This document shows, in pieces, positions 6,058 through 28,736 of a stretch of DNA of 64,000 nt. The position numbers were made by a program, and so were the translations under genes. The notes under the pieces are model-generated. The model had not been told where the DNA came from. It did not search any database and was given only the letters and a program-made list of their open reading frames with translations. The number at the start of each line of letters is the position of its first letter. Position 1 is the first letter of the stretch. The stretch lies in the IMG/VR virus record IMGVR_UViG_3300024350_000252, positions 174,048-238,047 of that record, one strand, 5' to 3'.

Positions 6058-6070
6058 CGGAGAAAAATAA

Positions 6071-6394: not shown

Positions 6395-6420
6395 TAAATA
6401 TAGCATCAGGGGAATAAACA

Positions 6421-6753: not shown

Positions 6754-6771
6754 TGAAGGATAAAGACGGGT

Positions 6772-7743: not shown

Positions 7744-7744
7744 G

Positions 7745-8725: not shown

Positions 8726-8737
8726 GGTGAAATAAGA

Positions 8738-9721: not shown

Positions 9722-9742
9722 TAAATAGTTTAGAGGATAAAA

Positions 9743-10474: not shown

Positions 10475-11431
10475 ATGGAACAGCAACAACCAACACAGCG
10501 ATCAAAAGCCTTTTTCTTAAATGGCGGCGCTGGCAGAGTTCTATGCTCTATCCCGGCATTAGAAAAATACGAAGAAGAATCAGGGGATAAAGATTTCATC
10601 ATAGTGTGCGAAGGTGGTACGGAAGTGTTCAAAGGACATCCTACACTAGACAGCAGAACATATGACAATTGGCACAAGAATCTTTTTGTAGAAAAAATCA
10701 AAGATCGCGATTGTGTAACACCCGAGCCTTATAGAGTTTGGGAATATTACAATCAAAAATGCGATCTAGCACAGGCATTTGATATCGAAATCAATAGAAA
10801 AGGCATTAGAGAATTACCTAAACCTAATCTAAGATTGAGCAAAGACGAATTGTTAGTAGGTAGACAGCTAATCGCCGACGTCAAGAAAAAAATCAAGAAA
10901 GAAAAAATCATAGTTTTCCAACCATTTGGCCGAGGCATAGACTATGTCGATGGTTCTTTTGTAGATCGTACTAACAGAAGCTTTGAATTTAAAGATGTAA
11001 AATCAATCATACGAAAACTTCAAGAAGCCAATTACGGTGTCGTAATGATGGGAGAAATGCGGCTCGATCTTACCAGCGAAAAACTAAAAGATGATGTAGC
11101 AGCACCAGAAAACACTACCATAAGACAGTGGGCAGCTATCATCAAATACGCAGATCATTTCTTGGGCTGTGACAGTGTGGGTCAACACCTAGCCTATATC
11201 GTAGGCAAACAATCTACTGTAGTATTCGGATCTACATATCCAGTTAACGTGTCTTACCCTAATTGTAAGTACATGAATCTTCTAGATATGGCTGAAGAAA
11301 TAAGAGAATATAGTCCTATCAGGATTACACTAGACGAACGTATTGATAGAAAACTAGAAGGAGTTATGTCCATGACTCCGGAAATTGTTGATTATGTAGT
11401 GAATGCTGTTTTAGGGAAGAAACAAAAATGA
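10475..11431 (+). CDS. GT9-like (heptosyltransferase-type, GT-B fold) glycosyltransferase
   Basis: N-terminal NGGAGRVLCSIPAL and C-terminal AAIIKYADHFLGCDSVGQHLA..STVVFGST match the GT9 pattern. Confidence 0.7.
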   Translation: MEQQQPTQRSKAFFLNGGAGRVLCSIPALEKYEEESGDKDFIIVCEGGTEVFKGHPTLDSRTYDNWHKNLFVEKIKDRDCVTPEPYRVWEYYNQKCDLAQAFDIEINRKGIRELPKPNLRLSKDELLVGRQLIADVKKKIKKEKIIVFQPFGRGIDYVDGSFVDRTNRSFEFKDVKSIIRKLQEANYGVVMMGEMRLDLTSEKLKDDVAAPENTTIRQWAAIIKYADHFLGCDSVGQHLAYIVGKQSTVVFGSTYPVNVSYPNCKYMNLLDMAEEIREYSPIRITLDERIDRKLEGVMSMTPEIVDYVVNAVLGKKQK

Positions 11432-13267: not shown

Positions 13268-13311
13268 ATTATGTCCGAAATCAGTTAAATACATAATACA
13301 AGAGAGTGACC

Positions 13312-14859: not shown

Positions 14860-14889
14860 TCAAATAAATATAGGGCTAGCGGGTAAAAA

Positions 14890-15438
14890 ATGACTACAAA
14901 CAGCAAAAGATTAAGCTCAGATTATGGATTTAAAAGTCCTGGATTTTCTGTAGATTCAAACGGAAACATCACCGGTACCAGTTTAGGTATAAAAGGTGTA
15001 AGTATCATCGATAGCACAGGAGCATTGACATCCAACGTCAAAATTACTTCTATCGAAGTCCTGGGATCTTTACAAAATCTCGATGTCAATGGCAATGTAA
15101 ACATACGTAATGGCAGTGTTTCTAGACTGTCAGTTAACGCAGGAAGAGTAGTGATCAAAAGTGGTACTACTGGCACTATCGACAATATGAATATCGGTAC
15201 TATAACACCTGGAACAGTATCAACATATAATCTCAGTATAGTCAATAATGGCTCTAGTCCAGGTAATCTCAATGTCAGTGGCGCAGATATAGTAGCTAAT
15301 AATGCTACAATTTCGGGTAATATAATTGCCACAGGCTATATCTTGTTAGCCAATAGTCCAACCGCAGCCACTCACGCAGTTAGAAAAGACTATGTGGATT
15401 CTAGCGCGATTACATACGCAGTAGCTTTTGGAGCATAA
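14890..15438 (+). CDS. Fibre-like virion protein (182 aa)
   Basis: C-terminal PTAATHAVRKDYVD fibre motif; ATAAATA at 14864-14870. Confidence 0.65.
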   Translation: MTTNSKRLSSDYGFKSPGFSVDSNGNITGTSLGIKGVSIIDSTGALTSNVKITSIEVLGSLQNLDVNGNVNIRNGSVSRLSVNAGRVVIKSGTTGTIDNMNIGTITPGTVSTYNLSIVNNGSSPGNLNVSGADIVANNATISGNIIATGYILLANSPTAATHAVRKDYVDSSAITYAVAFGA

Positions 15439-18400: not shown

Positions 18401-21400
18401 ACTGGAGCGGTAGCCACTATCAGTGTCTCAGGCACAGCTAACTCGATCACGACTTATTCGGCTGTTTCTGGAACTAACGTAGAATCACAAGGATCACTAG
18501 CAAGTTTCAACATCACACGACAGACGTCGCTTTACTCTTCGGTCACGCTAGCAACTAATGGTATAGGCTATGCTACTGGAAATAGAATATTAATATTAGG
18601 AACAGCTCTAGGAGGAGCAAGTCCTGCTAACGATCTAGTTATAACTGTCGGTTCTGTCAACGGTGTCGGAGTTATATCTACAGTGTCGTATGATACGGGA
18701 CAAGCAGCAGCAGGTGGCACCACTTTTGCTCTTTATTCTACCATTACATTCAGTGACGTTACATCGCAAGCAGTGCCAGCTAGCACATCTATCAATTATG
18801 CAGCACTGGCTACTATACGTGTTGACTTTGCTAATTACCACGGATTCGTACCAGGTAGCTCGATCATTGTAGCGGTCACTTCAGATAACGGAGTGAACAA
18901 TCACAATCTTGCCGGCGGTAGTTATTTTATTACACAGGTACCAACAGCGACATCGATACAATTTTTTGCTAGAGCAGCGGGAACTATTACAGGCACGATA
19001 CTTGGTAGAGTTTATGCTAGACCCGACAGCTTCTTTGTACACAGACCGTTCGACGGTGGTGTACAGCTAGGCACCAGCGGACCACAACATGGCGCACAGG
19101 CTATACGTCAAAGCAAGAAATATATTCGTTATCAATCAGGTAAAGGTATCATGTATACTACAGGTGCGTTATTCGCGCCCAGTTATACATTACAAAGTGC
19201 TACAGCATCACCTAATGTAGAAGTAGGAACTATACTAACATTTACCACAGACGACACTGATCATGGTCTACAGATAAATGGTAGGATCAGAATATCAGGA
19301 ATAACTACACCTGGTTATGATGGGGATTATGACGTTTATAATATTGTCAACGAAAGAACTTTCCAAGTAGTGTCATTATATAGATTAGGTTCTCAAACAG
19401 CACAGTTAGGTAATGACGCAGTCGTTTCTGTCTTGAACTGGCAAGGTGCTGCTGTTCGAGCAGGCACATTTGACGACCAAAATGGAATTTTTTGGGAATA
19501 CGACGGAGCAAATCTATGGGCAGTACAAAGATCAGCTACCAAACAGCTAGCAGGTACTGTAGCAGCAATACCCAATAGTAATTTAATCACAGGAACTAAC
19601 ACTAGATTTAGAGATCAATTAAAAGCCGGCGATACTCTGGTAATACGTGGTATGACCCATGTAGTGACTTCAGTCGTTGATCAAACTACTATGTATGTAA
19701 CTCCTGATTATCGAGGAGTTAACAACGTAAGCGGAGCTAAGATCTGTGCGGTTACAGAAAAACGTGTTCCACAATATCAATGGAATATCGATAGGCTAGA
19801 TGGTAGAGGTCCTAGCGGATATAAACTAGACATCACAAAGATGCAGATGATCGGATTACAATGGTCATGGTATGGTGCTGGTTTTATCGATTGGATGTTA
19901 AGAGGATCGAACGGTAATTTCATATTCTGCCATAGAATGAGAAATTCCAATGTTAACTACGAAGCATACATGCGAACTGGTAACATGCCTGTTCGTTACG
20001 AAGTACAGAATTATACAAAAAATGCCGCGTTAGCAGCAGATATGACTGCTACACAAAATACCATAGTCTTAGATGATGCTACGACATTTCCTACATTCGG
20101 AACTGTCTATATCGATAATGAATTGATGTACTACAGCGGTAAAACCAATAACACACTGACTGGTGTTACCAGACAAGCTCAACTGAATAATTTTACAGCA
20201 GGAGCAGCAAGAAGTTATACAGCAGGACCTTCTACTACACACAGCACAAGAACCGGAGTAGTACTAGTCAGTAACACCGTAACTCCTCAGATTAGCCACT
20301 GGGGTTCTGCGATGATCACTGATGGAAGATTCGATGAGGATAGAGGATATTTGTTCAGCTATACCAGTTCAGGAACTAGTATTTCCACTACTAAAGTCAC
20401 TGCGTTCTTGATTAGATTGGCTCCTAGCGTTAGTAACGCGGTAGTAGGAGATCTTGGTGATAGAGAGTTGATTAATAGAGCTCAGTTATTGCTACAAGAA
20501 ATTTCTATCACGACAGAAGCTAACGCTTCGGGCGGTGTAGTTATCGAAGGTATATTAAATCCGCAAAACTATCCAACTAACCCCGGCGATATCACTTGGG
20601 GTGGATTGAGTGGTCTGTCACAAGGTGGTCAGCCAAGCTTCGCACAGATCGCTCCTGGTGGTTCTGTAAACTGGAACGGTGGTGCTACTACAACTACTGC
20701 TACGATAACAGTGATTAATCCGATTACTACTACCGTTACTGTGCCTACTGGCACAGCATTCAATAGATCTAGCGGTACCAGTTTCTTCTATGTAACTAAA
20801 ACATCATGGGATACTGCTGGAGCATTCAATGGCATCAATATCAGCGATGGTAAATTTACCACAACCGGTACCAAGGTTTCTAGCGTTACTGCTAGCCCGG
20901 CACCCCAGGCTACCACTTTACCTCTAGTCGTGGGATCGGCTACTATAGCTTTCTCCCAAAGTAATAATCAAAATGTACAATATTTTACACAGACTAGTTG
21001 GCAAAATCTAAACGCAAAGGTCGGATATAGTGTATACACATTAGATAATTCATTCCCATCTGGTACAACTATAACACAGATACAGGGACCTTTTAATTTT
21101 TCAGGAATCAACTATTATCAAGTAACCTTTAGCCAACTGTCTCAGCAGCAGAAAAATCAAGGATCGACTGTACAATTCCAATTTGGTGGCACAGTGAATG
21201 CTGGTACACAGACTCTGTATTTTACACAAAGTTCTTGGGCAGCAAGACCTATAGATACTACCACAGGACAGACCACAAACAGCATTTATTTTACCAACGG
21301 TACTACCATAAGCACAATAGGTAGTTTAGATACGTTTGCTGGGTCTGGATTCTTTCCAGTAACATTTAGTACCGGTACACTCACTTCAGTGGCCGGTGCC

Positions 21401-21964
21401 GCCACTGTGGTGTTTACAGGTACATCATATTATACTATTGGCACTAACTTTGTGTCAACTTCTGCGGTCAACAGCGGACAGACAGTGACATTGGCTGTGT
21501 CATCTCCTAGCGGTAACACATCAGTCGTTTATGTTACTTCTGCGAGCTGGGAAGCTACTGGTGCTACGATCGGTACTTCTGTAGCTGCTACTGAAACTAA
21601 ATTCCCAGCAGGTACGGCGGTATCATCGGTGAGCACATTACAAACATTTAACAGTGTTACTTATTATTCTGTAACATTTACTCAGAGTTCAAATACGGCA
21701 ATCAATGCTGCCGCAACAATTACATTGAGCTTTGGTAATCCAGCTTTTGCTCAGCCAGGAGAAAAAGTATTTTCATTCATTGCTTCTCCGGGTACATCGG
21801 ATAGTTTGGATCTAAGCAGCTTAAAAGAATTGACTGTGACTGCTCTAGGTGGTCGAGGTACATATCCAAACGGTCCAGACGTTTTGGCTATCAACGTTTA
21901 TAAAACATCAGGAACGGCCGTTACTGCTAACTTGATTCTTCGTTGGTCTGAAGCACAAGCCTAA
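15446..21964 (+). CDS. Giant virion structural protein (2172 aa; tail/baseplate-associated)
   Basis: DAIERMRVATPQSMLDADFEYGLQPTKW, RQSKKYIRYQSGKG, WYGAGFI, MRTGNMPVRYEV motifs of T4-like virion proteins; four Ig-like repeats; Thr/Ser-rich. Confidence 0.8.
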   Translation: MAKKKIDNYVFRPGIGYNSYLYPNAYASLNNNLNFIQAEVTAYLDYKIAQDTAVNLLPNAVALLTNNRLWLANEITAYIAYNVSQGTPGFTGRTYDAAKCTSDVSKVITAYINDLRYGGNENTITAISYYWVGSVPQIAGTRFLEIAGYTYLKSLIANYVFTRTAPPTVYQSGTGLTQNTSGSNAESSAVTKMNVLTQNTIDVITSGLGSLPATQLKTATFANYTYDSQLCIRDLNFVLNAYLHDIRYGGNEQTVYVVGFYWNGTVAQVNGSRQPEIQAHTYVYQLIANYIIKNLQTPTPYQGIVPQVIVPSLTYESAAGAQVTYLGSTLVSVIANGLSSLPSIIPATNGQLKIQGNYTLSDFLLITNTTTNTIIYNFTNPANGGVIVTNSSEFSDPMVNSGGNFPDNPITDSDFPQFRQITDTVTFIEFISDTSSMSSTDSLQIFVEVPELTVRPYDFGTDAIERMRVATPQSMLDADFEYGLQPTKWQAIAMARGYPSIYEIPGTDQNLISIITDASTGTSGVGGSLITVTTASNHGFSTGQPITVRGLDPSVFGFARAEGSYIITAVPTTKSFSYYAKAKVGTVASTSLLTTYTSVRQGGFFTGAEIGTPSFTVLSNGSTGTVTTVFATNSGSNRFAFTTAGAPSIGAPISGTGIPTGSQITSIVGSGGVIVTPILTSDYLAGVSEIDVASTANILIGEAVNNGVGTAIFVTAINNNTLTFSAPFQAPLIGNTVTYSTVSGTNIVGTGNGATFNVTRNSTVDYTVAVNAAGTGYAVGDTIKILGSNVGGVTPVHDFYVTVSGLSGSGILTVNITGGVANPIDNQTISADNTVYTTASTGTNAVFSVTRGVSAYTVNITNGGSGYSINETFTILGTAFTFGATTANDVTITVVDVSASYTGVSGTVSPAGGNGATFNVTRVNAVYTLVTLVNPGTNYSLGDTITILGTDLGGTTTTNDLTISVSGIGVTGNVASFTFSGTAGGTGAVATISVSGTANSITTYSAVSGTNVESQGSLASFNITRQTSLYSSVTLATNGIGYATGNRILILGTALGGASPANDLVITVGSVNGVGVISTVSYDTGQAAAGGTTFALYSTITFSDVTSQAVPASTSINYAALATIRVDFANYHGFVPGSSIIVAVTSDNGVNNHNLAGGSYFITQVPTATSIQFFARAAGTITGTILGRVYARPDSFFVHRPFDGGVQLGTSGPQHGAQAIRQSKKYIRYQSGKGIMYTTGALFAPSYTLQSATASPNVEVGTILTFTTDDTDHGLQINGRIRISGITTPGYDGDYDVYNIVNERTFQVVSLYRLGSQTAQLGNDAVVSVLNWQGAAVRAGTFDDQNGIFWEYDGANLWAVQRSATKQLAGTVAAIPNSNLITGTNTRFRDQLKAGDTLVIRGMTHVVTSVVDQTTMYVTPDYRGVNNVSGAKICAVTEKRVPQYQWNIDRLDGRGPSGYKLDITKMQMIGLQWSWYGAGFIDWMLRGSNGNFIFCHRMRNSNVNYEAYMRTGNMPVRYEVQNYTKNAALAADMTATQNTIVLDDATTFPTFGTVYIDNELMYYSGKTNNTLTGVTRQAQLNNFTAGAARSYTAGPSTTHSTRTGVVLVSNTVTPQISHWGSAMITDGRFDEDRGYLFSYTSSGTSISTTKVTAFLIRLAPSVSNAVVGDLGDRELINRAQLLLQEISITTEANASGGVVIEGILNPQNYPTNPGDITWGGLSGLSQGGQPSFAQIAPGGSVNWNGGATTTTATITVINPITTTVTVPTGTAFNRSSGTSFFYVTKTSWDTAGAFNGINISDGKFTTTGTKVSSVTASPAPQATTLPLVVGSATIAFSQSNNQNVQYFTQTSWQNLNAKVGYSVYTLDNSFPSGTTITQIQGPFNFSGINYYQVTFSQLSQQQKNQGSTVQFQFGGTVNAGTQTLYFTQSSWAARPIDTTTGQTTNSIYFTNGTTISTIGSLDTFAGSGFFPVTFSTGTLTSVAGAATVVFTGTSYYTIGTNFVSTSAVNSGQTVTLAVSSPSGNTSVVYVTSASWEATGATIGTSVAATETKFPAGTAVSSVSTLQTFNSVTYYSVTFTQSSNTAINAAATITLSFGNPAFAQPGEKVFSFIASPGTSDSLDLSSLKELTVTALGGRGTYPNGPDVLAINVYKTSGTAVTANLILRWSEAQA

Positions 21965-22003: not shown

Positions 22004-23278
22004 ATGATACTAGTAATCGGTGATCTAATCTTAGACGTTTTCCAAAAAGGCAAAAGCCGCAGACTCAGCCCCGAAGCTCCTGTGCCTGTAATAACAGGTA
22101 TGTCGAGAAAAATCTATCCGGGAGGTGCTGCTAATTTAGCACTCAATCTAGCCGACATGGGAATAATAACTACAATCCGTGGACAGCTAGGTCGTGATGA
22201 AGAAGCTTATATATTAGACAATATGATCACACAGCATCCAAATATCAGATCCGCTATAGGATTTCAAGATGATGCTAACACTACTGTAAAAACTAGGATA
22301 ATTGCTAATGGACAGCAGATAGCTAGATTAGACGTAGACGGTATCTATTATCCAATTTCTATATTAGAAGTTTTTGAAAGAGAAGAAATAGAATTTGATA
22401 TAGTTGTAGTCAGCGATTATGATAAAGGTGTTATAGGAGATCTTTCTCAAGAACTTAAAATTTTAAAAGATCGAGGTATACGCACACTCATAGATCCTAA
22501 GAAAGATTTTGATCATTACAAAAATGCTTGGTTGATAAAACCTAATCTAAAAGAGTTTTTTGATTTTGTAGGACCAGCAGAAGATCCAGATCATATGTAT
22601 GATCTAGGTAGTAAAGCTCTTAGAAAATATAATATAGAATATATGTTAGTGACATTAGGTCATCAAGGTATGGCACTGATATCACAACGAGAAATACAAC
22701 ATTTTCCTGCTCTTGAGTGCGATGTTTATGATATCACTGGCGCTGGTGATTCTGCCCTAGCAGGATTAGTCTATGGACTTAATAAAGGAAAGTCTTTAAT
22801 AGACAGTATAGAATTAGCGCAAAAAGCTGCTAGCGTAGCCATTTCACATCATGGTGTTTATAGAGTAACTGAAAAAGAATTAAAAAATAAAACAGTATTT
22901 GCTAATGGTGTCTTCGATATACTACATGCTGGGCATATAAAATTGTTAGAACAAGCACGTAGATTAGGTGATCGATTAATAGTTGGTATCAATTCAGATA
23001 CCAGTGTTAAAAAATTAAAAGGCGATAACCGTCCAATCAACGACGAAAAAACAAGAGCACATACATTAAAACAATTTAGTTGTGTAGATGATGTGATTGT
23101 TTTTGACGAAGATACTCCTTATGACTTGATAAAAAAATTAAAACCTGATATAATAGTCAAGGGAGGCGATTATACTGTAGACCAGGTAGTAGGAAAAGAA
23201 TTGGTAGATGAAGTAGTGATAATACCTCTCGAAGAAGGATACAGTACTACTAAAATAATAGGAAATATAAATGGATAG
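22004..23278 (+). CDS. hldE: Bifunctional heptose-7-phosphate kinase / heptose-1-phosphate adenylyltransferase
   Basis: GDLILD..RLSPEAPVPV..GGAANLA, DITGAGD (PfkB kinase); NGVFDILHAGH..GINSDTSVKKLKG..RPIN (nucleotidyltransferase). Confidence 0.92.
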   Translation: MILVIGDLILDVFQKGKSRRLSPEAPVPVITGMSRKIYPGGAANLALNLADMGIITTIRGQLGRDEEAYILDNMITQHPNIRSAIGFQDDANTTVKTRIIANGQQIARLDVDGIYYPISILEVFEREEIEFDIVVVSDYDKGVIGDLSQELKILKDRGIRTLIDPKKDFDHYKNAWLIKPNLKEFFDFVGPAEDPDHMYDLGSKALRKYNIEYMLVTLGHQGMALISQREIQHFPALECDVYDITGAGDSALAGLVYGLNKGKSLIDSIELAQKAASVAISHHGVYRVTEKELKNKTVFANGVFDILHAGHIKLLEQARRLGDRLIVGINSDTSVKKLKGDNRPINDEKTRAHTLKQFSCVDDVIVFDEDTPYDLIKKLKPDIIVKGGDYTVDQVVGKELVDEVVIIPLEEGYSTTKIIGNING

Positions 23279-23660
23279 GATCACAGGAAAAGTAGATAAA
23301 GGTTGGGGCATGGAATTGATCTGGGCCTCAAATGATGAATATTGCGGAAAGATATTAGTATTCAATAACGCTGGTTCTAAGTTTTCGATGCATTTCCACA
23401 AAGACAAAGACGAAACTTGGTTTGTCAATCAGGGAAGATTTAAAGTGCGTTGGATAGATACTAAGACAGCAGTTTTATACGAAAAAGAACTTAACGAGGG
23501 AGATGTATGGCATAATCCTAGATTACAACCTCATCAGTTAGAAGCTATGGTTGGCAATTCATCTATCACTGAAGTAAGTACAGCCGACAGTCCAGATGAC
23601 AACTATCGTATTATACCCGGAGACAGTCAAGCTGAAATAATGCCCAAGGAAGAAAAATGA
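23271..23660 (+). CDS. Cupin protein (sugar-phosphate isomerase-like)
   Basis: KGWGMELIW..SMHFHKDKDETWFV..QPHQLEA..EVST cupin motifs; overlaps both neighbours. Confidence 0.8.
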   Translation: MDRITGKVDKGWGMELIWASNDEYCGKILVFNNAGSKFSMHFHKDKDETWFVNQGRFKVRWIDTKTAVLYEKELNEGDVWHNPRLQPHQLEAMVGNSSITEVSTADSPDDNYRIIPGDSQAEIMPKEEK

Positions 23661-24523
23661 TCGTAGTTACTGGTGCTGGCGGATTTATCGGATCTAATAT
23701 AGTTCGACGGTTAAACGACCAAGGTCGTGACGATATCATCGTTGTAGATAATGTGATCGATAATCTAAAAGATTGTAAATTCCAAGAACATATTTTGATC
23801 ACGAAATTTTATAGTTTTTTTAAACGCTGGGATCAGGTCGAAATCGTCTATCACGAAGGTGCTGCATCAGATACTACAATACAGATAATGGATGTTTTTT
23901 CTCAGATGAACATCGGTCCTTCTAGATTTCTGCTAGAAAAGAGCAAACATCACGAGTTCTTATTATCAATGGCTTCATCGGCATCTGTTTATGGAAATCA
24001 AAGTAATTTTAAAGAAACAGATGAAATGGATCCTATGTGTCCATATGCTTACAGCAAAGCAGTTATAGATGAAATGATAGACGATGATTTATCTAATGTT
24101 CAGTCATTTAGATATTTTAACGTGTACGGTCCTGCCGAACAGCATAAAAAACATCAGGCTAGCCCAATAACTAAATTTTATCTACAGGCTAAAAAAACAG
24201 GAATGATAGAAATTTTTGAAGGTTCCGAAAATTTCAAAAGAGATTTTGTATGTGTAAATGATTTGATAGATATAAAATTCCGAATGGCAGAAAAGAAAGT
24301 AAAAGGAATTTATAATATCGGTACAGGACAACCAAGATCATTCGCAGAGGTGGCAGAAATAATTGCGAACAAAACTAACGCAGAAATCAAGATCATTCCT
24401 TTCCCTGAAAATCTAAAAAATCAATATCAATCGTATACCTGTGCGGATACAACATTATTGAAATCTGTTATAGGTGAATATCAGTTTACTACTGTCGAAC
24501 AGTACGTTGATAGTCTTGAATAA
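23657..24523 (+). CDS. hldD: ADP-L-glycero-D-manno-heptose 6-epimerase
   Basis: IVVTGAGGFIGSN, HEGAASDT, ASSASVYG, YAYSK, RYFNVYGP, RDFVCVND, YQSYTCAD. Confidence 0.9.
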   Translation: MIVVTGAGGFIGSNIVRRLNDQGRDDIIVVDNVIDNLKDCKFQEHILITKFYSFFKRWDQVEIVYHEGAASDTTIQIMDVFSQMNIGPSRFLLEKSKHHEFLLSMASSASVYGNQSNFKETDEMDPMCPYAYSKAVIDEMIDDDLSNVQSFRYFNVYGPAEQHKKHQASPITKFYLQAKKTGMIEIFEGSENFKRDFVCVNDLIDIKFRMAEKKVKGIYNIGTGQPRSFAEVAEIIANKTNAEIKIIPFPENLKNQYQSYTCADTTLLKSVIGEYQFTTVEQYVDSLE

Positions 24524-24767
24524 AAAATTCAAGATCTTTCTTTGATTCTATTAATTTGAATTTATAAAGATTGTGGTTTTCAAAACCCATCGGTTCGAAT
24601 GCTAGGTTTCCGGCAGATTGATCTAAGTCTCTAGCACAATCTAAAAATCTTTTGTATAGTTTTAGAAAACTATTTTTTGTTTTTTCTTCAGTCAGTGACT
24701 CTAAAAAATTATCGTATTTTGCGCAGTCATTGACATAGTGTATACTATTTCTTATAGACATAGTCAT
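24489..24767 (-). CDS. Hypothetical protein (92 aa)
   Basis: ATGA-coupled to the upstream minus-strand gene; converges on and overlaps hldD by 35 bp. Confidence 0.6.
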   Translation of the reverse strand: MTMSIRNSIHYVNDCAKYDNFLESLTEEKTKNSFLKLYKRFLDCARDLDQSAGNLAFEPMGFENHNLYKFKLIESKKDLEFFIQDYQRTVRQ

Positions 24768-25150
24768 GCTGATTTCTCCATCAACAAAATAGTATCTATC
24801 TTTGTTTGTGTAATCTTGCTAGCTAATGTAGACTTTAAACCGGAATGAAGATTTTTTGGTAATAAGGACATGTTAGCCCAACAAAATGTCTGGTCTGCTT
24901 CTGATATAAATTCTTCTTCTACTAGACAGATATAAGTTGAAAATTCAAAACCTTGATCTTGGCTAAGATACAACTCAATAGGGATCAATCTATAGGCGCT
25001 GCTTTTATACAATGCGATAAGATCTTTTGAATCATCTACAACAGTTGTAGATCTTGAAAATGTTGGCACAGTCCATTTTGAATCATCTAGGATTAACATC
25101 ACTCTAGATGTTTTTTTACTAATAAAAAGTATGCCAGCACGTTTTTGCAT
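24764..25150 (-). CDS. Degenerate Nudix-fold protein
   Basis: RAGILFI..RVMLIL..W start and FCW..LPKNLHSGL end fit a Nudix scaffold, but there is no GX5EX7REUXEEXGU box. Confidence 0.5.
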   Translation of the reverse strand: MQKRAGILFISKKTSRVMLILDDSKWTVPTFSRSTTVVDDSKDLIALYKSSAYRLIPIELYLSQDQGFEFSTYICLVEEEFISEADQTFCWANMSLLPKNLHSGLKSTLASKITQTKIDTILLMEKSA

Positions 25151-25161
25151 ACTATTATGTA

Positions 25162-26616
25162 TCAGGGTTCTAAAATCATTCTCCAGAAACCGGATTGATA
25201 CTCACCTTCGAATGATCTTAGCCACTGTACACCGTCCCACTTGTATTGGATCTTGGTTTTAAGATTTTGTAAGTAACGAATATTTGGATCCTCGGCAGAC
25301 GCAAAGATCACATTCCACCGATTGCCGTTCCACTCTATAATATCGTTGGCATTTGCGACTAAATCTTGATTAGATGTTCCTTTCCAAGCATCAGCACCAT
25401 CAGTATTGATTTCAGATCCTATATCTTCTAGTATAAGATATCTAGTACCTGTTGGAATGTTTGCTTTTCCTTCCCAAAAAGTCAAGGGATTAAATGTTTG
25501 AGGATTGATAATTCCAGTCACATAAGGTATATCAGAATCGTTAGTTGGCAACGTATCCGCAAAGAAGTTGATTACTAGGTAAGTTGGATCAAGCTCGTTG
25601 ATCGTAAATGTACCAACAATTTCATAGCCTGTTTGTTGTAAAAATCTAATTTGGCTGATTCCTGCCTGATATCCGGGATCTCTCTGTAAAATTATTTCCC
25701 AGTTTAATTTTTCACCGCTGTGTACCGGAATGTTTATTAACCCACCTTCGGTAATTTCTGTAGGATCTATTATGCTAAGATAATATTGTCCAGTATCGAC
25801 TCCTGTGACAGCTAGACTAGATAGTAACAATACTTTGAATCTATCAGGAGACAATACTAAACTCTTACCTCCTATATTTGGTTCGTCTGAATTATAAACT
25901 ATATCATTTAAAGTCTTAAGACTACCATCCGAATTCATAACATTCATAACAATACTTTTGACAACGCCTAATTTCTTGACTTTGGCTGGCGGTGAAATAA
26001 ACACAGGCATTTCAAAATCTAATGAACACACATCTATATCCTGTTCCGTGCCTTGAGGTATAGTCCTGCTACTAAAAGAAACATTATTCAGCATCACAGT
26101 GCTCAAACTGGTCCAGTCGATATAGTTGTCTGTGAATTGTACTTCTAGACTAGGGTTGAACAATACTAAAATTTGTTCTAGTATCTGTAGTTTTTGATCA
26201 GTATTACTAGTCCAGATGTCTGCCTTGACAGTCATCTTATATGGAGTAGGCATAAGTCTTTCTACAGTATATCCTCCACCTTGTGCGTTATTGTATTCTA
26301 TAACATTATTTCCGTTTTCATCAGTAACTGTACCGTAATCTCTTTCTCTGATATTAACTTTCGAAACAAAAGATGCATCCGATAATCTTGCTGTGTCTAA
26401 TTCTAATGCGGTGACATAACATGATATTTTAGGTACACTAGGCATCTTATTCTCAGAATTTTCTCTGATAATATTGGCTACCTGTCTGCTTAGATCACCG
26501 TAAGACACTGGTACTTGTTTCAACGTTCCGTCACCGGCTTGATATTTGAAACCGATAAAAATACGCATGAACTGTGTTATGAAACGTCTTATCTGTCCGT
26601 CGTAGAAAAAATCCAT
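25162..26616 (-). CDS. gp15: Tail sheath stabiliser/terminator, T4 gp15-like, C-terminally extended
   Basis: FFYDGQIRRFITQFMRIF..VPVSYG..PTPYK..QILEQILVLFNPS..FEMPVFISPPAKV; adjacent to the neck genes. Confidence 0.75.
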   Translation of the reverse strand: MDFFYDGQIRRFITQFMRIFIGFKYQAGDGTLKQVPVSYGDLSRQVANIIRENSENKMPSVPKISCYVTALELDTARLSDASFVSKVNIRERDYGTVTDENGNNVIEYNNAQGGGYTVERLMPTPYKMTVKADIWTSNTDQKLQILEQILVLFNPSLEVQFTDNYIDWTSLSTVMLNNVSFSSRTIPQGTEQDIDVCSLDFEMPVFISPPAKVKKLGVVKSIVMNVMNSDGSLKTLNDIVYNSDEPNIGGKSLVLSPDRFKVLLLSSLAVTGVDTGQYYLSIIDPTEITEGGLINIPVHSGEKLNWEIILQRDPGYQAGISQIRFLQQTGYEIVGTFTINELDPTYLVINFFADTLPTNDSDIPYVTGIINPQTFNPLTFWEGKANIPTGTRYLILEDIGSEINTDGADAWKGTSNQDLVANANDIIEWNGNRWNVIFASAEDPNIRYLQNLKTKIQYKWDGVQWLRSFEGEYQSGFWRMILEP

Positions 26617-27938
26617 TATTCGTCTGCCTTGGGTCTAAGAGCTTTTGACAGGCTCTGTTTTTCTTTGATAGTTTTACCGTTGATCACGGTAGTTTTTTCG
26701 TTATTAATAAATGTACCTTTTTGGTTCAGTCTTACTTTATCGGTATCAGTAGTGTCAGAGAAACCTGTTTCGCTGACGGTCATCCTTACGTTGTCTGAGT
26801 ATCTGACCCAATTTCTTCCATCGTATCTAAACAATCTCTTAGGAAAGTAATCTGTTCGCAAACAATATTGTCCAGGAACAGGATTAGCTGGAAAATAGAT
26901 ACCGCTGGTAAAAGCAGCACCATTGGGCGGCAGTCCTTCCTCGAGGTACTGTTGATATCCTGGAGCTACAGGGTGTGCTACTATCATGCTGGCATCGTCA
27001 TAAGTTTCTGATGCCGGCACTGTAGTAGTATCAACTGTTTGTAGTGCTATCCTTCCTGTCTCTGGATCTACAGGAACAGTATAATATGTAGTAGTATCAT
27101 ACCCGGCTTTAGGTACATCTAGTTCTGCTTGTTCAAGCACGGCTTGAGTTATACCAAGTTCAGTTTTGTAAGTACTAGTCACATCTCTGAGACTGTCTGC
27201 CAGTTTATAATAATTTGTGTTTGGCGGCGCGATATCTGTTACAGGAGCAGTTACGGTATATTTTTTACCATCTGGACCTGTTACAACATCGCCGATCTGA
27301 TAGGTATAACCAGGACGATACACACCTACATCGCTGTCTGTGTCGGCTATACCGTCTAGTATCTGTTTGAATTCTTGGCTGTCTACCAGTGGAGTACATT
27401 TGGCACGATACAAGTGTGGGTACCAAGTTACTGAAAATCCCTGTGCTGCTCTATTAACTTCTTGAATAACATAAAATCTTTTGAGAGCAAACTTAAGATC
27501 GTTAAGAGCATGATAATCTTTAAGGTGTGGCAATTCTAGTACATCGCCTGGCATAATCTTCCTGCCTAATTTTTCCACAGTATCATTGATGTGGAATGTA
27601 ATGAATACCGTGTCGTTTTGTAAAAATAAACCAAATTGACTGAGATTAAAATCTATATCCTGTATATTGTAATGACCTCGCAAAATGTAAACATTAGGGT
27701 CATATTTTCTATCTCTGTTTTCTAAAAACAGCAAATCTTGTATATGCGTTTCAGGAGTAGAAGTTCCTGTATAATTAGGTAAACTAGGGCTGCTTTCCCC
27801 AGGCAATGGATCTCCAGGACCGGCATATTTGTGTACTAGAACATCCGTACCGCCAACTTGGAACATCTCCCAAATATTGCGGTCAAAAAACTTGTAATCG
27901 TTGCCTTTTTCGGGCTTGTATAAACTGAGTCTTGGCAT
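26616..27938 (-). CDS. gp14: Neck protein, T4 gp14-like
   Basis: DLLFLENRDRKYD..QDIDFNLSQFGLFL..PGDVLELPHL; start moved to ATG at 27938 (MPRLSLY), downstream of GTAAATA at 27946-27952. Confidence 0.75.
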   Translation of the reverse strand: MPRLSLYKPEKGNDYKFFDRNIWEMFQVGGTDVLVHKYAGPGDPLPGESSPSLPNYTGTSTPETHIQDLLFLENRDRKYDPNVYILRGHYNIQDIDFNLSQFGLFLQNDTVFITFHINDTVEKLGRKIMPGDVLELPHLKDYHALNDLKFALKRFYVIQEVNRAAQGFSVTWYPHLYRAKCTPLVDSQEFKQILDGIADTDSDVGVYRPGYTYQIGDVVTGPDGKKYTVTAPVTDIAPPNTNYYKLADSLRDVTSTYKTELGITQAVLEQAELDVPKAGYDTTTYYTVPVDPETGRIALQTVDTTTVPASETYDDASMIVAHPVAPGYQQYLEEGLPPNGAAFTSGIYFPANPVPGQYCLRTDYFPKRLFRYDGRNWVRYSDNVRMTVSETGFSDTTDTDKVRLNQKGTFINNEKTTVINGKTIKEKQSLSKALRPKADE

Positions 27939-27971
27939 AGTATTATATTTACCGCCACGATAAATAACAGT

Positions 27972-28736
27972 ATGAGCCAACTAGATGAAGAAAAACAGAA
28001 GGTCTATGACTATTGTAAGACCATGCTGGGCGACGGCATGATCGACGTCGAACTAGATCCTATACACTATCAAACAGCCCTTGATAGGTCATTAGCTATT
28101 TTTAGGCAAAGATCGGACAATTCTGTAGAAGAATCTTTCGCATATCTAACGCTGGAAATAGACAAAAACGAGTACATACTGCCTAAAGAAATACAGGTAG
28201 TACGTGAAATCTATAGGCGTTCGATAGGTTCTAGATCCGGCGGCGGCACGGGAGGCACAGTATTTGAACCATTCAATCTAGCCTATACAAATACCTATCT
28301 ATTAAGCTCGACAAACATGGGCGGTCTTCTAACTTATGAACTGTTTGCTCAATATCAAGAACGTGTGGGTAAGATGTTCGGTAGCTTCATACAGTTTACA
28401 TGGCATCCACAAACGCACAAACTGACTATACACCAAAGACCGCGTTCTATGGAACAAGTCATGTTATGGGTTTACAATACTCGCCCAGATCATGCTATCT
28501 TGACAGATACGTATGCTAACATATGGATCAAAGATTACACACTAGCTAACTGTAAAATGATGCTAGGACAAGCACGTGAAAAATTCCAAACTATCGCAGG
28601 CCCAGGCGGCGGAACCAGCCTAAACGGGCAAGCATTAAAACAAGAAGCACAAGCAGATATCGAACGACTGACAGCAGAACTGGTCAACTTTGTACCAGGC
28701 ACTGCTATGGCCGGATATACATTCGTTATTGGTTAA
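27972..28736 (+). CDS. gp13: Neck protein, T4 gp13-like
   Basis: LGDGMIDVELDPIHY..WIKDYTLANCKMMLGQAREKF..GPGGGTSLNG. Confidence 0.85.
   Translation: MSQLDEEKQKVYDYCKTMLGDGMIDVELDPIHYQTALDRSLAIFRQRSDNSVEESFAYLTLEIDKNEYILPKEIQVVREIYRRSIGSRSGGGTGGTVFEPFNLAYTNTYLLSSTNMGGLLTYELFAQYQERVGKMFGSFIQFTWHPQTHKLTIHQRPRSMEQVMLWVYNTRPDHAILTDTYANIWIKDYTLANCKMMLGQAREKFQTIAGPGGGTSLNGQALKQEAQADIERLTAELVNFVPGTAMAGYTFVIG

What the first reader, a model, noticed from the sequence alone, without database searches (positions are those of the whole stretch)
22004..24523. Late-expressed ADP-heptose operon (hldE-cupin-hldD) inside the structural region
Seen: three overlapping genes behind a late-type box, wedged between virion genes; gmhA and gmhB are not in this window; a cupin sits between hldE and hldD. 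Known: HldE and HldD make ADP-L-glycero-D-manno-heptose for LPS core and protein heptosylation. Inference: late timing argues for a donor for virion decoration (GT9-like gene at 10475) or host LPS remodelling. The cupin may yield a non-standard heptose isomer or replace a missing step.
Basis: partly seen in the sequence, partly recalled or inferred. Interest (0 to 1): 0.62.

Follow-up and report, generated by a model that had tools for sequence, protein, structure and literature searches.

The report
Phage ADP-heptose genes with cupin isomerase
A giant marine phage carries, inside its tail-fibre and neck gene block, the genes for making the sugar donor ADP-heptose. The small cupin gene among them most likely replaces the usual first enzyme of that pathway (GmhA), a substitution I did not find described, and it recurs in hundreds of phages and in many tiny archaea and bacteria.

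Summary
Window 22004-24523 has three translationally coupled genes: a fused HldE-like heptose-7-P kinase/adenylyltransferase, a 129-aa metal cupin, and an HldD-like 6-epimerase with all four catalytic residues. They lie between a 2172-aa virion protein and the neck genes. There is no late box directly upstream. The phage's late-type motif (TAAATA) sits at 13286 and 14865, so the trio is probably the tail of a late structural transcript.

No GmhA or GmhB is found in the 238-kb record or in a complete 364-kb relative.

The cupin is always present in this cassette: 80 of 80 related viral loci, every cultured cyanomyovirus that has the cassette, and about 39 of 77 cellular loci. A GmhA-type isomerase is essentially never present, while the phosphatase slot is filled by several unrelated HAD enzymes. 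The cyanophage gene annotated 'phosphoheptose isomerase' is in fact such a HAD phosphatase.

The cupin's relatives pass the Pfam phosphomannose-isomerase model, and its profile best matches D-lyxose/mannose isomerases. I conclude it is a cupin-type sedoheptulose-7-P isomerase (inferred, not assayed).

The block 6071-24523 (fibre genes, GT9-like transferase, carbamoyltransferase, heptose genes, giant virion protein) is gene-for-gene syntenic with cyanophage S-CAM1. This favours decoration of virion fibres.

The parts
22004..23278 (+). [quoted passage not shown]
   Evidence: Pfam PfkB 9.6e-30 and CTP_transf_like 1.7e-24. NF008454 HldE scores 393.5 bits, below its cut-off of 521. TIGR02199 scores 182.7, above its cut-off of 181.5. 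PDB HldA 4e84 matches at 6.5e-36 with GAGD kept; HldC 5x9q matches at 2.7e-30 with HxGH kept.
23271..23660 (+). 129-aa single-domain metal cupin; proposed sedoheptulose-7-P / D-glycero-D-manno-heptose-7-P isomerase (GmhA analogue)
   Evidence: Cupin_1 and Cupin_2 match; phrog_7851 at 2.6e-33. H41, H43, E48 and H88 are invariant in 31 relatives. The model has pLDDT 78.8. It is present in 80 of 80 viral cassettes, while E. coli GmhA-like genes are found in none. Relatives pass PF01050. The profile matches D-lyxose isomerase 2y0o at 2e-9.
23657..24523 (+). HldD-like ADP-glycero-manno-heptose 6-epimerase (288 aa)
   Evidence: TIGR02197 scores 258.2 bits against a cut-off of 274.6. E. coli HldD 1eq2 matches at 1.4e-53 over residues 1-283, with Ser116, Tyr140, Lys144 and Lys178 aligned to identical residues.
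10475..11431 (+). GT9-like glycosyltransferase, probable ADP-heptose-dependent heptosyltransferase
   Evidence: PF01075 at 2.8e-4 (20.7 bits, cut-off 22). TIGR02201 heptosyltransferase III at 2.2e-5. phrog_8954 at 1e-135. Many relatives carry PF01075. The best fold matches are GT9 3tov, WaaC, WaaF and TibC (model pLDDT 63). The gene is present in 5 of 5 related phage records.
11428..13242 (+). NodU/CmcH-type O-carbamoyltransferase
   Evidence: Carbam_trans_C 1.9e-56 and Carbam_trans_N 2.2e-26, both above their cut-offs. phrog_1601 'Nol-like carbamoyltransferase' at 1.8e-167. It is 50% identical to the S-CAM1 gene that lies beside the heptose genes.
13286..13291 (+). Late-type motif TAAATA, preceded by a terminator-like hairpin, 15 nt before the 517-aa gene
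14865..14870 (+). Late-type motif (AAATAAATATAG), 20 nt before the 182-aa gene; the last such box before a gene start upstream of hldE
   Evidence: Gaps from here to hldD are 7 nt, 39 nt and overlaps, with no terminator-like site in the gaps.
13306..15438 (+). Two fibre-like genes (517 aa and 182 aa) that lead the transcription unit
   Evidence: Weak PHROG tail-fibre matches. The 182-aa protein shares its N-terminus with the gene beside the giant protein in L004.
15446..21964 (+). Giant 2172-aa Thr/Gly/Ser-rich virion structural protein; candidate acceptor of the glycan
   Evidence: phrog_5838 'virion structural protein' at 1e-248. S+T content is 23.7%. It is 45-49% identical to the S-CAM1 and S-CAM3 virion structural protein that also adjoins the heptose genes. 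A homologue lies within 10 kb of the cupin in 71 of 80 viral loci.
52..10393 (+). Upstream part of the syntenic fibre module: a 2001-aa tail fibre, two ~108-aa proteins, three Gly/Cys-rich ~325-aa paralogues and a 216-aa protein
   Evidence: phrog_9851 tail fibre at 5.6e-107. One-to-one matches to S-CAM1 h228, h227, h226-h224 and h223.
24489..24767 (-). 92-aa ORF, convergent; its 3' end overlaps the hldD 3' end by 35 nt; function unknown
   Evidence: Also called as a gene in L010.
24764..25150 (-). 128-aa NUDIX-derived protein that has lost the Nudix box
   Evidence: 39% identical to the C-terminal half of the L004 NUDIX hydrolase. The alignment shows the G-x5-E-x7-REIxEEIG box deleted. No Pfam hit.
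25162..28736 (.). Neck genes: gp15 tail-sheath stabiliser (-), gp14-position virion protein (-) and gp13 adaptor (+)
   Evidence: PF16724 at 7.9e-26; phrog_11591 and phrog_211; PF26809.

Best explanation
The three genes are the core of a self-contained phage pathway that makes ADP-L-glycero-beta-D-manno-heptose from the pentose-phosphate intermediate sedoheptulose-7-phosphate.

Proposed steps:
1. The cupin, a His/His/Glu/His metal enzyme related to phosphomannose and D-lyxose isomerases, converts sedoheptulose-7-P to D-glycero-D-manno-heptose-7-P. It stands in for the SIS-fold enzyme GmhA (inferred).
2. The HldE kinase domain makes the beta-1,7-bisphosphate (by homology).
3. The 7-phosphate is removed. 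In this phage that must be done by a host enzyme or by an unidentified phosphatase. Its nearest relatives carry a small HAD phosphatase exactly between the cupin and hldD, and other relatives carry GmhB-like or NT5C-like HADs there.
4. The HldE transferase domain makes ADP-D,D-heptose (by homology).
5. HldD epimerises C6'' (by homology, catalytic residues intact).

The genes have no late box of their own. They are most likely transcribed as the tail of a late structural operon that starts at the boxes at 13286 and 14865. The donor is then used by the GT9-like heptosyltransferase at 10475, and the sugar is probably O-carbamoylated by the neighbouring carbamoyltransferase. The most likely acceptor is a virion fibre protein of the same module, such as the 2172-aa protein. 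This last step is the least certain.
For: Enzyme identities and catalytic residues.

Cupin as the isomerase:
(a) Pathway hole.
- In 80 related viral loci the counts are cupin 80, HldD 80, transferase 78, kinase 77 and E. coli GmhA-like 0.
- The phosphatase next to the cupin varies: GmhB-like in 19 loci, small HAD in 11, an NT5C-like HAD in L079.
- A GmhA HMM finds nothing in any viral locus or in the own genome.
- TIGR00441 is absent from the complete genomes of S-SSM7, Sf-FS3, P-TIM68 and the 364-kb relative G001.
(b) The cyanophage 'phosphoheptose isomerase' is a HAD phosphatase. It matches PDB 9iqw at 2.4e-15 and TIGR01689, carries the DxDxT motif and has no SIS signal. Those cassettes therefore hold kinase, phosphatase, transferase, epimerase and cupin: five genes for five steps.
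(c) 62 of 81 picocyanobacterial genomes have no GmhA-like match, so many cyanophage hosts cannot supply the step.
(d) In 77 cellular loci found through the cupin alone, 39 carry HldA- or HldC-type genes, 26 of these also carry a HAD phosphatase, and tblastn with E. coli GmhA found none (a GmhA HMM found one weak SIS, in L162). Seven have kinase, transferase and phosphatase but no HldD-like gene.
(e) Chemistry.
- The metal ligands H41, H43, E48 and H88 are invariant in the viral clade; H43, E48 and H88 stay invariant in the phage-plus-cellular alignment A5, where H41 is Gln in L119/L127.
- Relatives L119 and L127 pass PF01050 MannoseP_isomer and carry the PMI-like Gln at position 41.
- Atlas neighbours carry PF01050 and Lyx_isomer.
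- The A5 profile's best full-length PDB matches are D-lyxose/mannose isomerases, at 2e-9 and 2.7e-6.

Late and structural context:
- TAAATA statistics and positions.
- Tight spacing with no terminator in the gaps.
- In the other gene order the cassette follows gp15 on the same strand.
- Contigs from RNA libraries bridge the giant/hldE junction and the stretch from the hldE end through the cupin into hldD.

Virion target:
- Gene-for-gene synteny of 6071-24523 with S-CAM1.
- The closest homologues of the giant protein are exactly those that adjoin heptose genes.
- The GT9-like gene is 50-54% identical between phages of very different hosts and is present in 5 of 5 related records.
Against: - No assay exists, so the cupin's substrate is inferred.
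- Fold comparison cannot separate isomerases from other cupins. The CapF C3-epimerase domain has Z 14.3, KdgF 14.1, cPGI 12.2 and PMI 12.0.
- The window's own cupin does not reach PF01050.
- One cellular locus, L162, holds both the cupin and a weak GmhA-like SIS protein.
- 12 of 29 cupin-bearing genomes have sub-threshold SIS proteins elsewhere.
- About half of the cellular cupin loci show no heptose genes nearby, for example Marinoscillum, where the cupin is 62% identical.
- This phage lacks any cassette phosphatase, so it is not fully self-sufficient.
- One third of its genome is unseen.
- There is no late box directly before hldE.
- The RNA evidence is contigs only, without strand or level, and DNA carry-over is possible.
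- Nothing shows that any virion protein is glycosylated.
- The host is unknown.
Confidence: 0.5

Rival explanations
1. The cupin acts after activation, on ADP-heptose. It would be a metal-dependent epimerase or keto-isomerase working with the HldD-like SDR, as the CapF cupin domain or WbuC-type cupins do, and would produce a non-standard heptose isomer. The sedoheptulose-7-P isomerase step would be supplied by the host.
For: The best VIA fold match is the CapF cupin domain, at Z 14.3. There is a weak WbuC-family hit at 2.2e-4. The cupin lies beside the SDR gene here. 19 of 81 picocyanobacteria, and 12 of 29 cupin-bearing genomes, do have GmhA-like proteins. L162 has the cupin and a SIS protein together.
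Against: The Z scores are tied with isomerases. CapF is a weaker and partial sequence-profile match (2e-4) than D-lyxose isomerase (2e-9, full length). Seven cellular operons have cupin, kinase, transferase and phosphatase but no HldD-like SDR. Cassettes that bother to encode the most dispensable step, the phosphatase, never encode GmhA. Most cyanophage hosts lack GmhA.
Confidence: 0.2
2. The pathway is as in the best explanation, but the heptose is put on the infected cell's envelope (LPS core or another surface glycan) to block superinfection or to prevent progeny being trapped on debris. It would not go on the virion.
For: GT9 enzymes characterised so far are mostly LPS-core heptosyltransferases, and WaaC and WaaF are among the best fold matches. 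Cyanophage literature files these genes under LPS synthesis. Carbamoylated heptose occurs in the Pseudomonas LPS core (from memory, not tested here).
Against: The transferase is 50-54% identical between phages of picocyanobacteria and this non-cyanophage jumbo phage. That fits a phage-encoded acceptor better than host envelopes that differ. The genes are embedded in, and move together with, fibre and virion genes in two gene orders. The operon looks late, which is a poor time for changing the envelope. TibC, a protein heptosyltransferase, is also among the fold matches.
Confidence: 0.3
3. ADP-heptose is the donor for glycosylating phage DNA, a hypermodified base that protects against restriction.
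For: Phage GT-B transferases commonly glycosylate DNA (reviewed in PMC12619734). A dNMP kinase gene lies nearby at 28794-29474.
Against: No thymidylate-synthase-family hydroxymethylase is found in the 238-kb record or in the complete 364-kb relative. The genes sit in the structural block, not the replication block. The linkage is to fibre genes.
Confidence: 0.05
4. The cupin is an oxygenase, as its database name 'cysteine dioxygenase' implies. It would be unrelated to heptose synthesis, or would oxidise the glycan or a protein side chain.
For: The PHROG and RefSeq name. Quercetinases and oxalate decarboxylases are among the sequence and fold matches. Several 2OG oxygenases sit in the cyanophage clusters.
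Against: Those matches reflect only the shared metal-cupin core. The gene is strictly linked to kinase and transferase genes across viruses, archaea and bacteria. Relatives belong to PF01050. Cysteine dioxygenase itself is only a low-ranked fold match, at rank 42.
Confidence: 0.05

Closest known systems
Bacterial ADP-L-glycero-beta-D-manno-heptose pathway (GmhA, HldE or HldA/HldC, GmhB, HldD) of Gram-negative LPS core synthesis
   Same: A fused PfkB kinase plus cytidylyltransferase-type adenylyltransferase, 36% identical to Salmonella RfaE. An HldD with identical catalytic residues. A GT9-like transferase as the consumer.
   Different: There is no SIS-fold GmhA; a 129-aa metal cupin occupies that place. 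This phage has no GmhB. The genes are shorter than the bacterial ones and fall below the NCBIfam equivalog cut-offs, except for HldE domain II. They are embedded in a virion gene block.
Heptose 'LPS' auxiliary gene cluster of T4-like cyanophages (S-CAM1, S-CAM3, S-SSM7, Sf-FS3, P-SSM2, P-TIM68, S-SM2, SynMITS9220M01)
   Same: The same protein families (phrog_8133, 7878, 7851, 540, 8954 and 1601). The same neighbours: a fibre, small proteins, Cys-rich paralogues, a giant virion protein and gp13-15. Gene-for-gene synteny with S-CAM1.
   Different: In cyanophages the kinase and the transferase are separate genes and a small HAD phosphatase is present. Here they are fused and the phosphatase is missing. 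The carrier here is a ~355-kb jumbo myovirus whose sheath is closest to those of phages Phosso, PA5oct and Atu_ph07, and it has no psbA. The published annotations call the phosphatase 'phosphoheptose isomerase' and the cupin 'cysteine dioxygenase' or 'nucleotidyltransferase'.
Cupin-type sugar and sugar-phosphate aldose-ketose isomerases: type II phosphomannose isomerase domain (PF01050), minimal Thermococcus PMIs (7zvy, 7zvm), D-lyxose/D-mannose isomerase (2y0o, 7nzo), cupin phosphoglucose isomerase (1qxj)
   Same: A single small cupin barrel with a His(Gln)-x-His...Glu...His metal site. Substrates with manno or lyxo configuration at C2/C3, as in D-glycero-D-manno-heptose. Relatives pass PF01050. 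Profile matches at 2e-9 to 6e-4.
   Different: The window's protein itself is below every specific family threshold. The proposed seven-carbon phosphosugar substrate is, as far as my literature searches reached, not described for any cupin.
CapF (Cap5F) C-terminal cupin domain and WbuC-family cupins of nucleotide-sugar pathways
   Same: A metal-binding cupin that works next to an SDR enzyme in a surface-glycan pathway. It is the best VIA fold score, at 14.3.
   Different: CapF is fused to its SDR and acts on a UDP-4-keto sugar. Here the cupin tracks with the kinase and the transferase rather than with the SDR, and the sequence-profile match is weaker.
Virion glycosylation in mycobacteriophages (Freeman et al. 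2023, PMC10527164, as cited in PMC12619734) and protein heptosylation of autotransporters by TibC/Aah
   Same: Transferase genes placed beside the structural genes they modify. TibC is a GT9-fold enzyme that uses ADP-heptose on Ser/Thr-rich fibrous proteins, and it is among the fold matches.
   Different: No glycan has been shown on any virion of this phage group. Mycobacteriophages use host-made donors, whereas here the phage brings the donor pathway itself.

Membership tests
HldE (bifunctional heptose-7-P kinase / heptose-1-P adenylyltransferase) | N-terminal PfkB/ribokinase-fold kinase with the GAGD catalytic motif | tested here: met
   PfkB at 9.6e-30. The alignment to HldA 4e84 keeps GAGD.
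HldE (bifunctional heptose-7-P kinase / heptose-1-P adenylyltransferase) | C-terminal cytidylyltransferase-fold domain with HxGH | tested here: met
   TIGR02199 scores 182.7, above its cut-off of 181.5. HAGH aligns to HRGH of HldC 5x9q.
HldE (bifunctional heptose-7-P kinase / heptose-1-P adenylyltransferase) | Whole-protein equivalog score (NF008454 at least 521 bits; domain I TIGR02198 at least 345) | tested here: not met
   393.5 and 259.8 bits. It is a divergent, shortened member, and function is inferred from motifs.
HldD (ADP-glycero-manno-heptose 6-epimerase) | SDR fold with Ser116, Tyr140, Lys144 and the second base Lys178 (E. coli numbering) | tested here: met
   All four residues are identical in the alignment to 1eq2, at 1.4e-53.
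HldD (ADP-glycero-manno-heptose 6-epimerase) | Equivalog score (TIGR02197 at least 274.6) | tested here: not met
   258.2 bits, just below the cut-off.
GmhA (SIS-fold sedoheptulose-7-P isomerase) | SIS domain (PF13580 / TIGR00441) | tested here: not met
   There is no match anywhere in the 238-kb record. The cupin has a different fold. If it does the same reaction it is an analogue, not a member.
Type II phosphomannose isomerase cupin (PF01050) | Pfam gathering score | tested here: inconclusive
   The window's cupin has no PF01050 hit at E<0.01. Relatives L119 and L127, at 39-41% identity, score 32.1 and 27.5 against a cut-off of 23.6. 13-36% of members of neighbouring Atlas clusters carry it.
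Type II phosphomannose isomerase cupin (PF01050) | Metal site Gln/His-x-His ... Glu ... His | tested here: met
   H41, H43, E48 and H88 are invariant in the viral clade; across phage plus cellular relatives (A5) H43, E48 and H88 stay invariant and H41 is nearly so. Position 41 is Gln in the PF01050-positive relatives.
Type II phosphomannose isomerase cupin (PF01050) | Aldose-ketose isomerase activity on a phosphosugar | not testable with these tools
   This needs an enzyme assay.
Glycosyltransferase family 9 (heptosyltransferases) | PF01075 gathering score | tested here: not met
   20.7 bits against a cut-off of 22. Many relatives at 70-77% identity do carry PF01075 in precomputed hits.
Glycosyltransferase family 9 (heptosyltransferases) | GT-B fold closest to WaaC, WaaF or TibC | tested here: met
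   The top Foldseek hits are 3tov (GT9, 5e-8), WaaC, WaaF and TibC. The model has only pLDDT 63 and TM 0.31-0.37.
NodU/CmcH O-carbamoyltransferases | Carbam_trans_N plus Carbam_trans_C above their cut-offs | tested here: met
   93.6 bits (cut-off 24) and 190.7 bits (cut-off 27).
T4-type late promoter in front of hldE | TATAAATA, or this phage's TAAATA core, within the upstream gap | tested here: not met
   The 39-nt gap holds only ATAATTA. Exact boxes lie at 13286 and 14865.

The most novel reading that the evidence does not exclude
A previously unrecognised class of sedoheptulose-7-phosphate isomerase, built on a ~120-aa metal cupin instead of the SIS fold, completes the ADP-heptose pathway. 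It would operate in a large clade of marine and estuarine jumbo phages, in T4-like cyanophages, and in many DPANN archaea and Patescibacteria. In the phages the pathway feeds a heptosyltransferase and a carbamoyltransferase that coat giant virion fibre proteins with (carbamoyl-)heptose. That would be the first case of a phage bringing the whole donor pathway for glycosylating its own particle.
Probability: 0.3. Interest if true: 0.8.

Novelty: new variant of a known kind. Interest (0 to 1): 0.62.

Why it matters
1. It would add a non-homologous enzyme for the first committed step of heptose synthesis. Genome annotation currently uses GmhA to score that step as 'present' or 'absent'. Heptose pathways in DPANN archaea, Patescibacteria and phages are therefore being missed or called incomplete.

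2. It corrects two names that have propagated through cyanophage genomes and AMG catalogues. 'Phosphoheptose isomerase/gmhA' is a HAD phosphatase, and 'cysteine dioxygenase' is the likely isomerase. One of these genes has even been used as a marker 'gmhA' AMG in ocean surveys (PMC9238414).

3. The module is abundant. More than 2000 protein clusters (90% identity) related to the cupin turn up in public metagenomes, and contigs identical to this region are present in riverine RNA libraries.

4. Because the module is tied to fibre genes, it gives a testable handle on whether marine myoviruses glycosylate their adsorption apparatus. That bears on host range, stability and particle stickiness in the sea.

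5. Cultured carriers (S-CAM1, S-SSM7, P-SSM2) make all of this directly testable.

Tried and rejected
- Exact T4 late box TATAAATA: only 3 copies in 64 kb, fewer than chance, and none near hldE.
- Sigma-70-like and terminator scans of 9.5-28.5 kb: promoter-like sites are not above shuffles (53 against 60). A strong-looking TTGATA-17-TATAAT at 23126-23154 inside hldE cannot be told from chance.
- gmhA, gmhB and small-HAD searches in the own record: nothing. The only find is a distant NT5C-like HAD at C1:65180-65605, outside the window and of unknown role.
- PDB sequence searches with the GT9-like protein and its profile: no hits. Only the fold search worked.
- Foldseek and VIA on the cupin: they confirm a metal cupin but cannot separate functions.
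- Marinoscillum pacificum homologue (62% identical): an orphan beside radical-SAM and methyltransferase genes, which says nothing on function.
- HldE-bearing huge phages and a faecal contig (L179-L181): no GmhA and no cupin within reach, so uninformative.
- Genome-wide GmhA exclusivity in cupin-bearing cellular genomes: not clean. 17 of 29 have none and 12 have sub-threshold SIS proteins. I therefore claim exclusivity only at operon level.
- Cyanophage identity of the window: rejected. There is no psbA and the sheath is closest to those of phages Phosso, PA5oct and Atu_ph07.
- DNA-glycosylation route: no ThyA-family hydroxymethylase.
- Literature: no paper links a cupin to sedoheptulose-7-P isomerisation, or cyanophage heptose genes to carbamoyltransferase or virion glycans.
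- The 'moraphage' paper (PMC12619734) does not mention heptose and was not shown to be this lineage.
- Not used: the large representative-protein search (the word search and family scans were enough), complex prediction (an enzyme-substrate pair is not a suitable question for it), and any non-standard genetic code.

Full report
**What the window is.** The window is the last 64 kb of a 238,047-bp IMG/VR virus record that CheckV rates 67% complete. The same proteins occur on contigs of 354-367 kb. The tail sheath is about 45% identical to those of the jumbo myoviruses Phosso, PA5oct and Atu_ph07. No psbA is found here or in a complete 364-kb relative. The carrier is therefore an uncultured jumbo myovirus of about 355 kb and not a cyanophage. 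Contigs identical to the region occur in riverine metatranscriptome libraries.

**The observation.**
- Three ORFs lie exactly where stated: 22004-23278 (424 aa), 23271-23660 (129 aa) and 23657-24523 (288 aa).
- They overlap as ATGGATAG and ATGA, and purine-rich ribosome sites lie just upstream of both internal starts.
- The first ORF is a fused PfkB kinase plus cytidylyltransferase-type domain.
  - The NCBIfam HldE equivalog scores 393.5 bits, below its 521 cut-off.
  - The domain II model scores 182.7 bits, above its 181.5 cut-off.
  - It aligns to the solved HldA kinase with GAGD kept and to the solved HldC transferase with HxGH kept.
- The third ORF aligns end to end with E. coli HldD at 1.4e-53, and Ser116, Tyr140, Lys144 and Lys178 are all conserved.
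- The middle ORF is a single cupin barrel.
- Upstream, after a 39-nt gap, ends a 2172-aa Thr/Gly/Ser-rich protein of the PHROG family 'virion structural protein'.
- Downstream and convergent lie a 92-aa ORF, a NUDIX remnant, gp15 and a gp14-position virion protein, followed by gp13 on the + strand.
- So 'three overlapping genes wedged between virion genes' is correct.

**The late box.**
- The gap before hldE reads ATCATTGTATCACTGAACTGGTCATCGATAATTACTAGC. It holds no TATAAATA.
- I derived the phage's own candidate late motif. ATAAATA and TAAATAT are the most enriched words in non-coding stretches upstream of genes, with 16-17 genes against about 0.4-0.5 expected.
- TAAATA is strongly avoided overall in the window, with 28 copies against 76 expected.
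- Its copies fall 5-40 nt before the starts of structural genes: sheath 29791; 33263; 33992; 37572; 39173; gp13 27961.
- Upstream of hldE on the + strand, the boxes that precede a gene start are at 13286, right after a terminator-like hairpin, and at 14865. A further copy at 15531 lies inside the giant gene.
- From there to the end of hldD the genes are 7 and 39 nt apart or overlap, and no terminator-like site falls in the gaps.
- In the other gene order found in relatives, the heptose genes follow gp15 on the same strand.
- Late expression is thus a reasonable inference from operon structure. It does not follow from a box in front of hldE.
- RNA-library contigs bridge 20500-22304 and 23177-24325. 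That is compatible with read-through but proves nothing about strand, level or timing.

**The cassette is known, but two genes are mislabelled.**
- In cultured phages the cupin occurs only in T4-like cyanomyoviruses (35 records). There it always lies beside the heptose kinase, transferase and epimerase genes.
- In S-SSM7 and Sf-FS3 the cluster also lies next to gp13-15.
- Published notes list these genes as LPS-related host-like genes (PMC7378029).
- The cyanophage gene called 'phosphoheptose isomerase' (about 111 aa) gives no SIS or GmhA signal at all.
  - It matches a solved 'capsule biosynthesis protein' at 2.4e-15 and the EcbF/BcbF capsule phosphatase and HAD-IIIA models, and it has a DxDxT motif.
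  - It is a HAD phosphatase, that is, the GmhB analogue.
- The cupin itself is variously annotated 'cysteine dioxygenase' or 'nucleotidyltransferase'.

**What the cupin is.** The evidence comes in four parts.

*(i) Pathway bookkeeping in viruses.*
- In 80 viral loci retrieved with the cupin alone, the counts were: cupin 80, HldD 80, transferase 78, kinase 77 and E. coli-type GmhA 0.
- An HMM built from five GmhA sequences found nothing in 87 viral loci or in the own genome, although it recovered its positive controls.
- TIGR00441 is absent from the complete genomes of S-SSM7, Sf-FS3, P-TIM68 and the complete 364-kb relative.
- The phosphatase position next to the cupin, in contrast, is filled by different HADs in different sublineages:
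  - GmhB-like in 19 loci;
  - the small EcbF-type HAD in 11;
  - an NT5C-like HAD in the 364-kb phage;
  - a 233-aa unknown protein in 24;
  - nothing in this phage and its twin L011.
- A cassette that repeatedly recruits the most dispensable enzyme, never carries GmhA and always carries the cupin is most simply read as having the cupin in the isomerase role.

*(ii) What the hosts can supply.* 62 of 81 picocyanobacterial genomes show no GmhA-like match.

*(iii) Cellular genomes.*
- Of 77 cellular loci found through the cupin, 39 carry HldA- or HldC-type genes and 28 carry both.
- Of those 39, 26 also carry a HAD phosphatase and 18 carry an HldD-like gene.
- tblastn with E. coli GmhA finds none within about 8 kb, and the five-seed GmhA HMM finds only the weak SIS protein of L162.
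- A typical operon is cupin-hldD-kinase-gmhB-transferase. These operons occur in Woesearchaeota, Nanoarchaeota, Patescibacteria and others.
- Seven full sets lack an HldD-like gene. The cupin therefore follows the core pathway rather than the SDR.

*(iv) Chemistry.*
- H41, H43, E48 and H88 are invariant.
- Two Chloroflexota relatives pass Pfam's phosphomannose-isomerase C-terminal model, and they carry Gln at position 41 as PMIs do.
- Neighbouring Atlas clusters carry PF01050 and Lyx_isomer.
- A profile of phage plus cellular cupins finds D-lyxose/D-mannose isomerases as its best full-length solved matches: 2y0o at 2e-9 and 7nzo at 2.7e-6. Thermococcus PMIs score near 5e-4 and CapF scores 2e-4.
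- D-mannose, D-lyxose and D-glycero-D-manno-heptose share the C2/C3 configuration that such enzymes handle.

*Caveats.*
- Structure comparison alone is not discriminating. CapF scores Z 14.3, KdgF 14.1, cPGI 12.2 and PMI 12.0.
- One MAG locus, L162, has both the cupin and a weak SIS protein, alongside an HddA-type kinase. This may be two parallel pathways.
- 12 of 29 cupin-bearing genomes have sub-threshold SIS proteins elsewhere.
- About half of the cellular cupins, including a 62%-identical one in Marinoscillum, have no heptose genes nearby.
- I put the isomerase assignment at about 0.6.

**Conservation.** Within the jumbo clade the cupin is the slowest-evolving gene of the neighbourhood.
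- Between this phage and the L004 lineage it is 71% identical. HldE and HldD are 41-42% identical and gp15 is 47%.
- More than 2000 protein clusters related to the cupin turned up in metagenomes; the 120 best listed are 70-80% identical.

**Where the sugar goes.**
- The gene at 10475 is a real GT9-like protein.
  - It has sub-threshold PF01075 and heptosyltransferase III hits, and many close relatives carry PF01075.
  - The best fold matches are a GT9 protein, WaaC, WaaF and the protein heptosyltransferase TibC (the model has moderate confidence).
- It overlaps a NodU/CmcH carbamoyltransferase gene.
- Both genes lie beside the heptose genes in S-CAM1, S-CAM3, S-SSM7, Sf-FS3 and P-SSM2, and the GT9-like gene is present in 5 of 5 related jumbo-phage records.
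- The whole stretch 6071-24523 matches S-CAM1 gene for gene: two ~108-aa proteins, three Gly/Cys-rich paralogues, a ~220-aa protein, the transferase (54%), the carbamoyltransferase (50%), the heptose genes and the giant virion protein (45%), followed by the neck genes.
- The closest homologues of the giant protein (48-53%) are exactly those that adjoin heptose genes. More distant ones (35%) occur in cyanophages that did not appear in the cupin search.
- In 71 of 80 viral loci the giant gene is within 10 kb of the cupin, in two different gene orders.
- A transferase this conserved across phages of unrelated hosts, travelling with fibre genes in an operon that looks late, points to a phage-encoded acceptor.
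- I therefore favour heptosylation, and probably O-carbamoylation, of virion fibre proteins, at about 0.4-0.45. Remodelling of the host envelope is the main alternative, at about 0.3.
- DNA glycosylation is unlikely. No thymidylate-synthase-family hydroxymethylase is present.

**What is special to this phage.** Its closest relatives (gp15 62% identical; for example L019) have the same order, kinase, transferase, cupin, small HAD and hldD. Here the HAD is missing and hldD starts inside the cupin's stop codon. The dephosphorylation step must therefore come from the host, from an unrelated phage enzyme, or from the unseen third of the genome.

**Novelty and verdict.**
- The gene set is a known kind of auxiliary cassette, so the headline 'phage ADP-heptose operon' is not new.
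- Three things appear new, as far as the searchable literature shows:
  - a cupin reading as the GmhA replacement;
  - its spread to DPANN and CPR heptose operons;
  - the recognition that the module is part of a conserved fibre-glycosylation block shared by jumbo phages and cyanomyoviruses.
- These conclusions rest on comparative genomics and homology, and none has been tested at the bench.

Noticed in passing
window 6772-9721 (+): Three tandem paralogues of 323-327 aa with 17% Gly and exactly 33 Cys each (10%). They have no Pfam family. Homologues h224-h226 lie at the same place in cyanophage S-CAM1. Their function is unknown; they could be disulfide- or metal-rich fibre accessories.
   Followed up: partly
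window 24764-25150 (-): A 128-aa protein homologous to the NUDIX hydrolase that precedes HldE in 76 of 80 related loci. The Nudix box (G-x5-E-x7-REIxEEIG) has been deleted. The same dead form is conserved (63% identical) in the complete 364-kb relative, so it is kept for some non-catalytic role.
   Followed up: partly
L002 9356-9691 (S-SSM7 gp130), L003 9137-9475 (P-TIM68), L094 11159-11482 (S-CAM1): Genes annotated 'phosphoheptose isomerase' in RefSeq cyanophage genomes are small HAD phosphatases and not GmhA. The label has been carried into AMG marker lists as 'gmhA' (PMC9238414).
   Followed up: yes
window-wide; e.g. 13286, 14865, 27961, 29791, 33263, 33992, 37572, 39173, 44528: TAAATA is nearly three-fold depleted in the window. 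The surviving copies sit just upstream of gene starts, mostly of structural genes. This looks like a T4-like late promoter core in a jumbo phage that is only distantly T4-like.
   Followed up: partly
window 24489-24523: The 3' ends of hldD (+) and the 92-aa ORF (-) overlap by 35 nt with no terminator-like hairpin. Convergent transcripts would therefore collide or pair.
   Followed up: no
window 23126-23154 (+): A near-consensus sigma-70-like site (TTGATA, 17 nt, TG-TATAAT) lies inside the 3' part of hldE, about 115 nt before the cupin start. Such sites are not more frequent than chance in this region, so its meaning is open.
   Followed up: no
L119 6390-8363 and L127 6363-8348 (Chloroflexota MAGs): Here the cupin is the C-terminal domain of ~660-aa proteins whose first ~540 residues match no Pfam family.
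   Followed up: no
L162 5565-12361 (Acidimicrobiaceae MAG): One locus combines a beta-type set (PfkB kinase, HldC-like transferase, cupin) with an alpha-type set (HddA-like GHMP kinase, a weak GmhA-like SIS protein, a HAD-transferase fusion) and several SDRs. This may be two heptose pathways side by side.
   Followed up: partly
L004 7303-8004 and 23 other viral loci: A 233-aa protein with only a faint DUF6065 match sits between the epimerase and the cupin in one sublineage, where other sublineages have a phosphatase. It might be yet another phosphatase, or a different accessory.
   Followed up: no
window 44539-45297 (+): A 252-aa ORF whose N-terminal part resembles the cytidylyltransferase domain of HldE (37% over 113 aa). 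It is preceded by the only + strand TATAAATA in the window. It is probably an NMN-type adenylyltransferase rather than a heptose gene.
   Followed up: no
L096/L097 (Neomarinimicrobiota MAG), L095/L101 (Crocinitomicaceae MAG): Contigs binned into bacterial MAGs carry the full phage arrangement (gp15, NUDIX, HldE, cupin, giant protein). They are jumbo-phage contigs mis-binned with, or co-occurring with, those bacteria. This is a weak hint to hosts at best.
   Followed up: no
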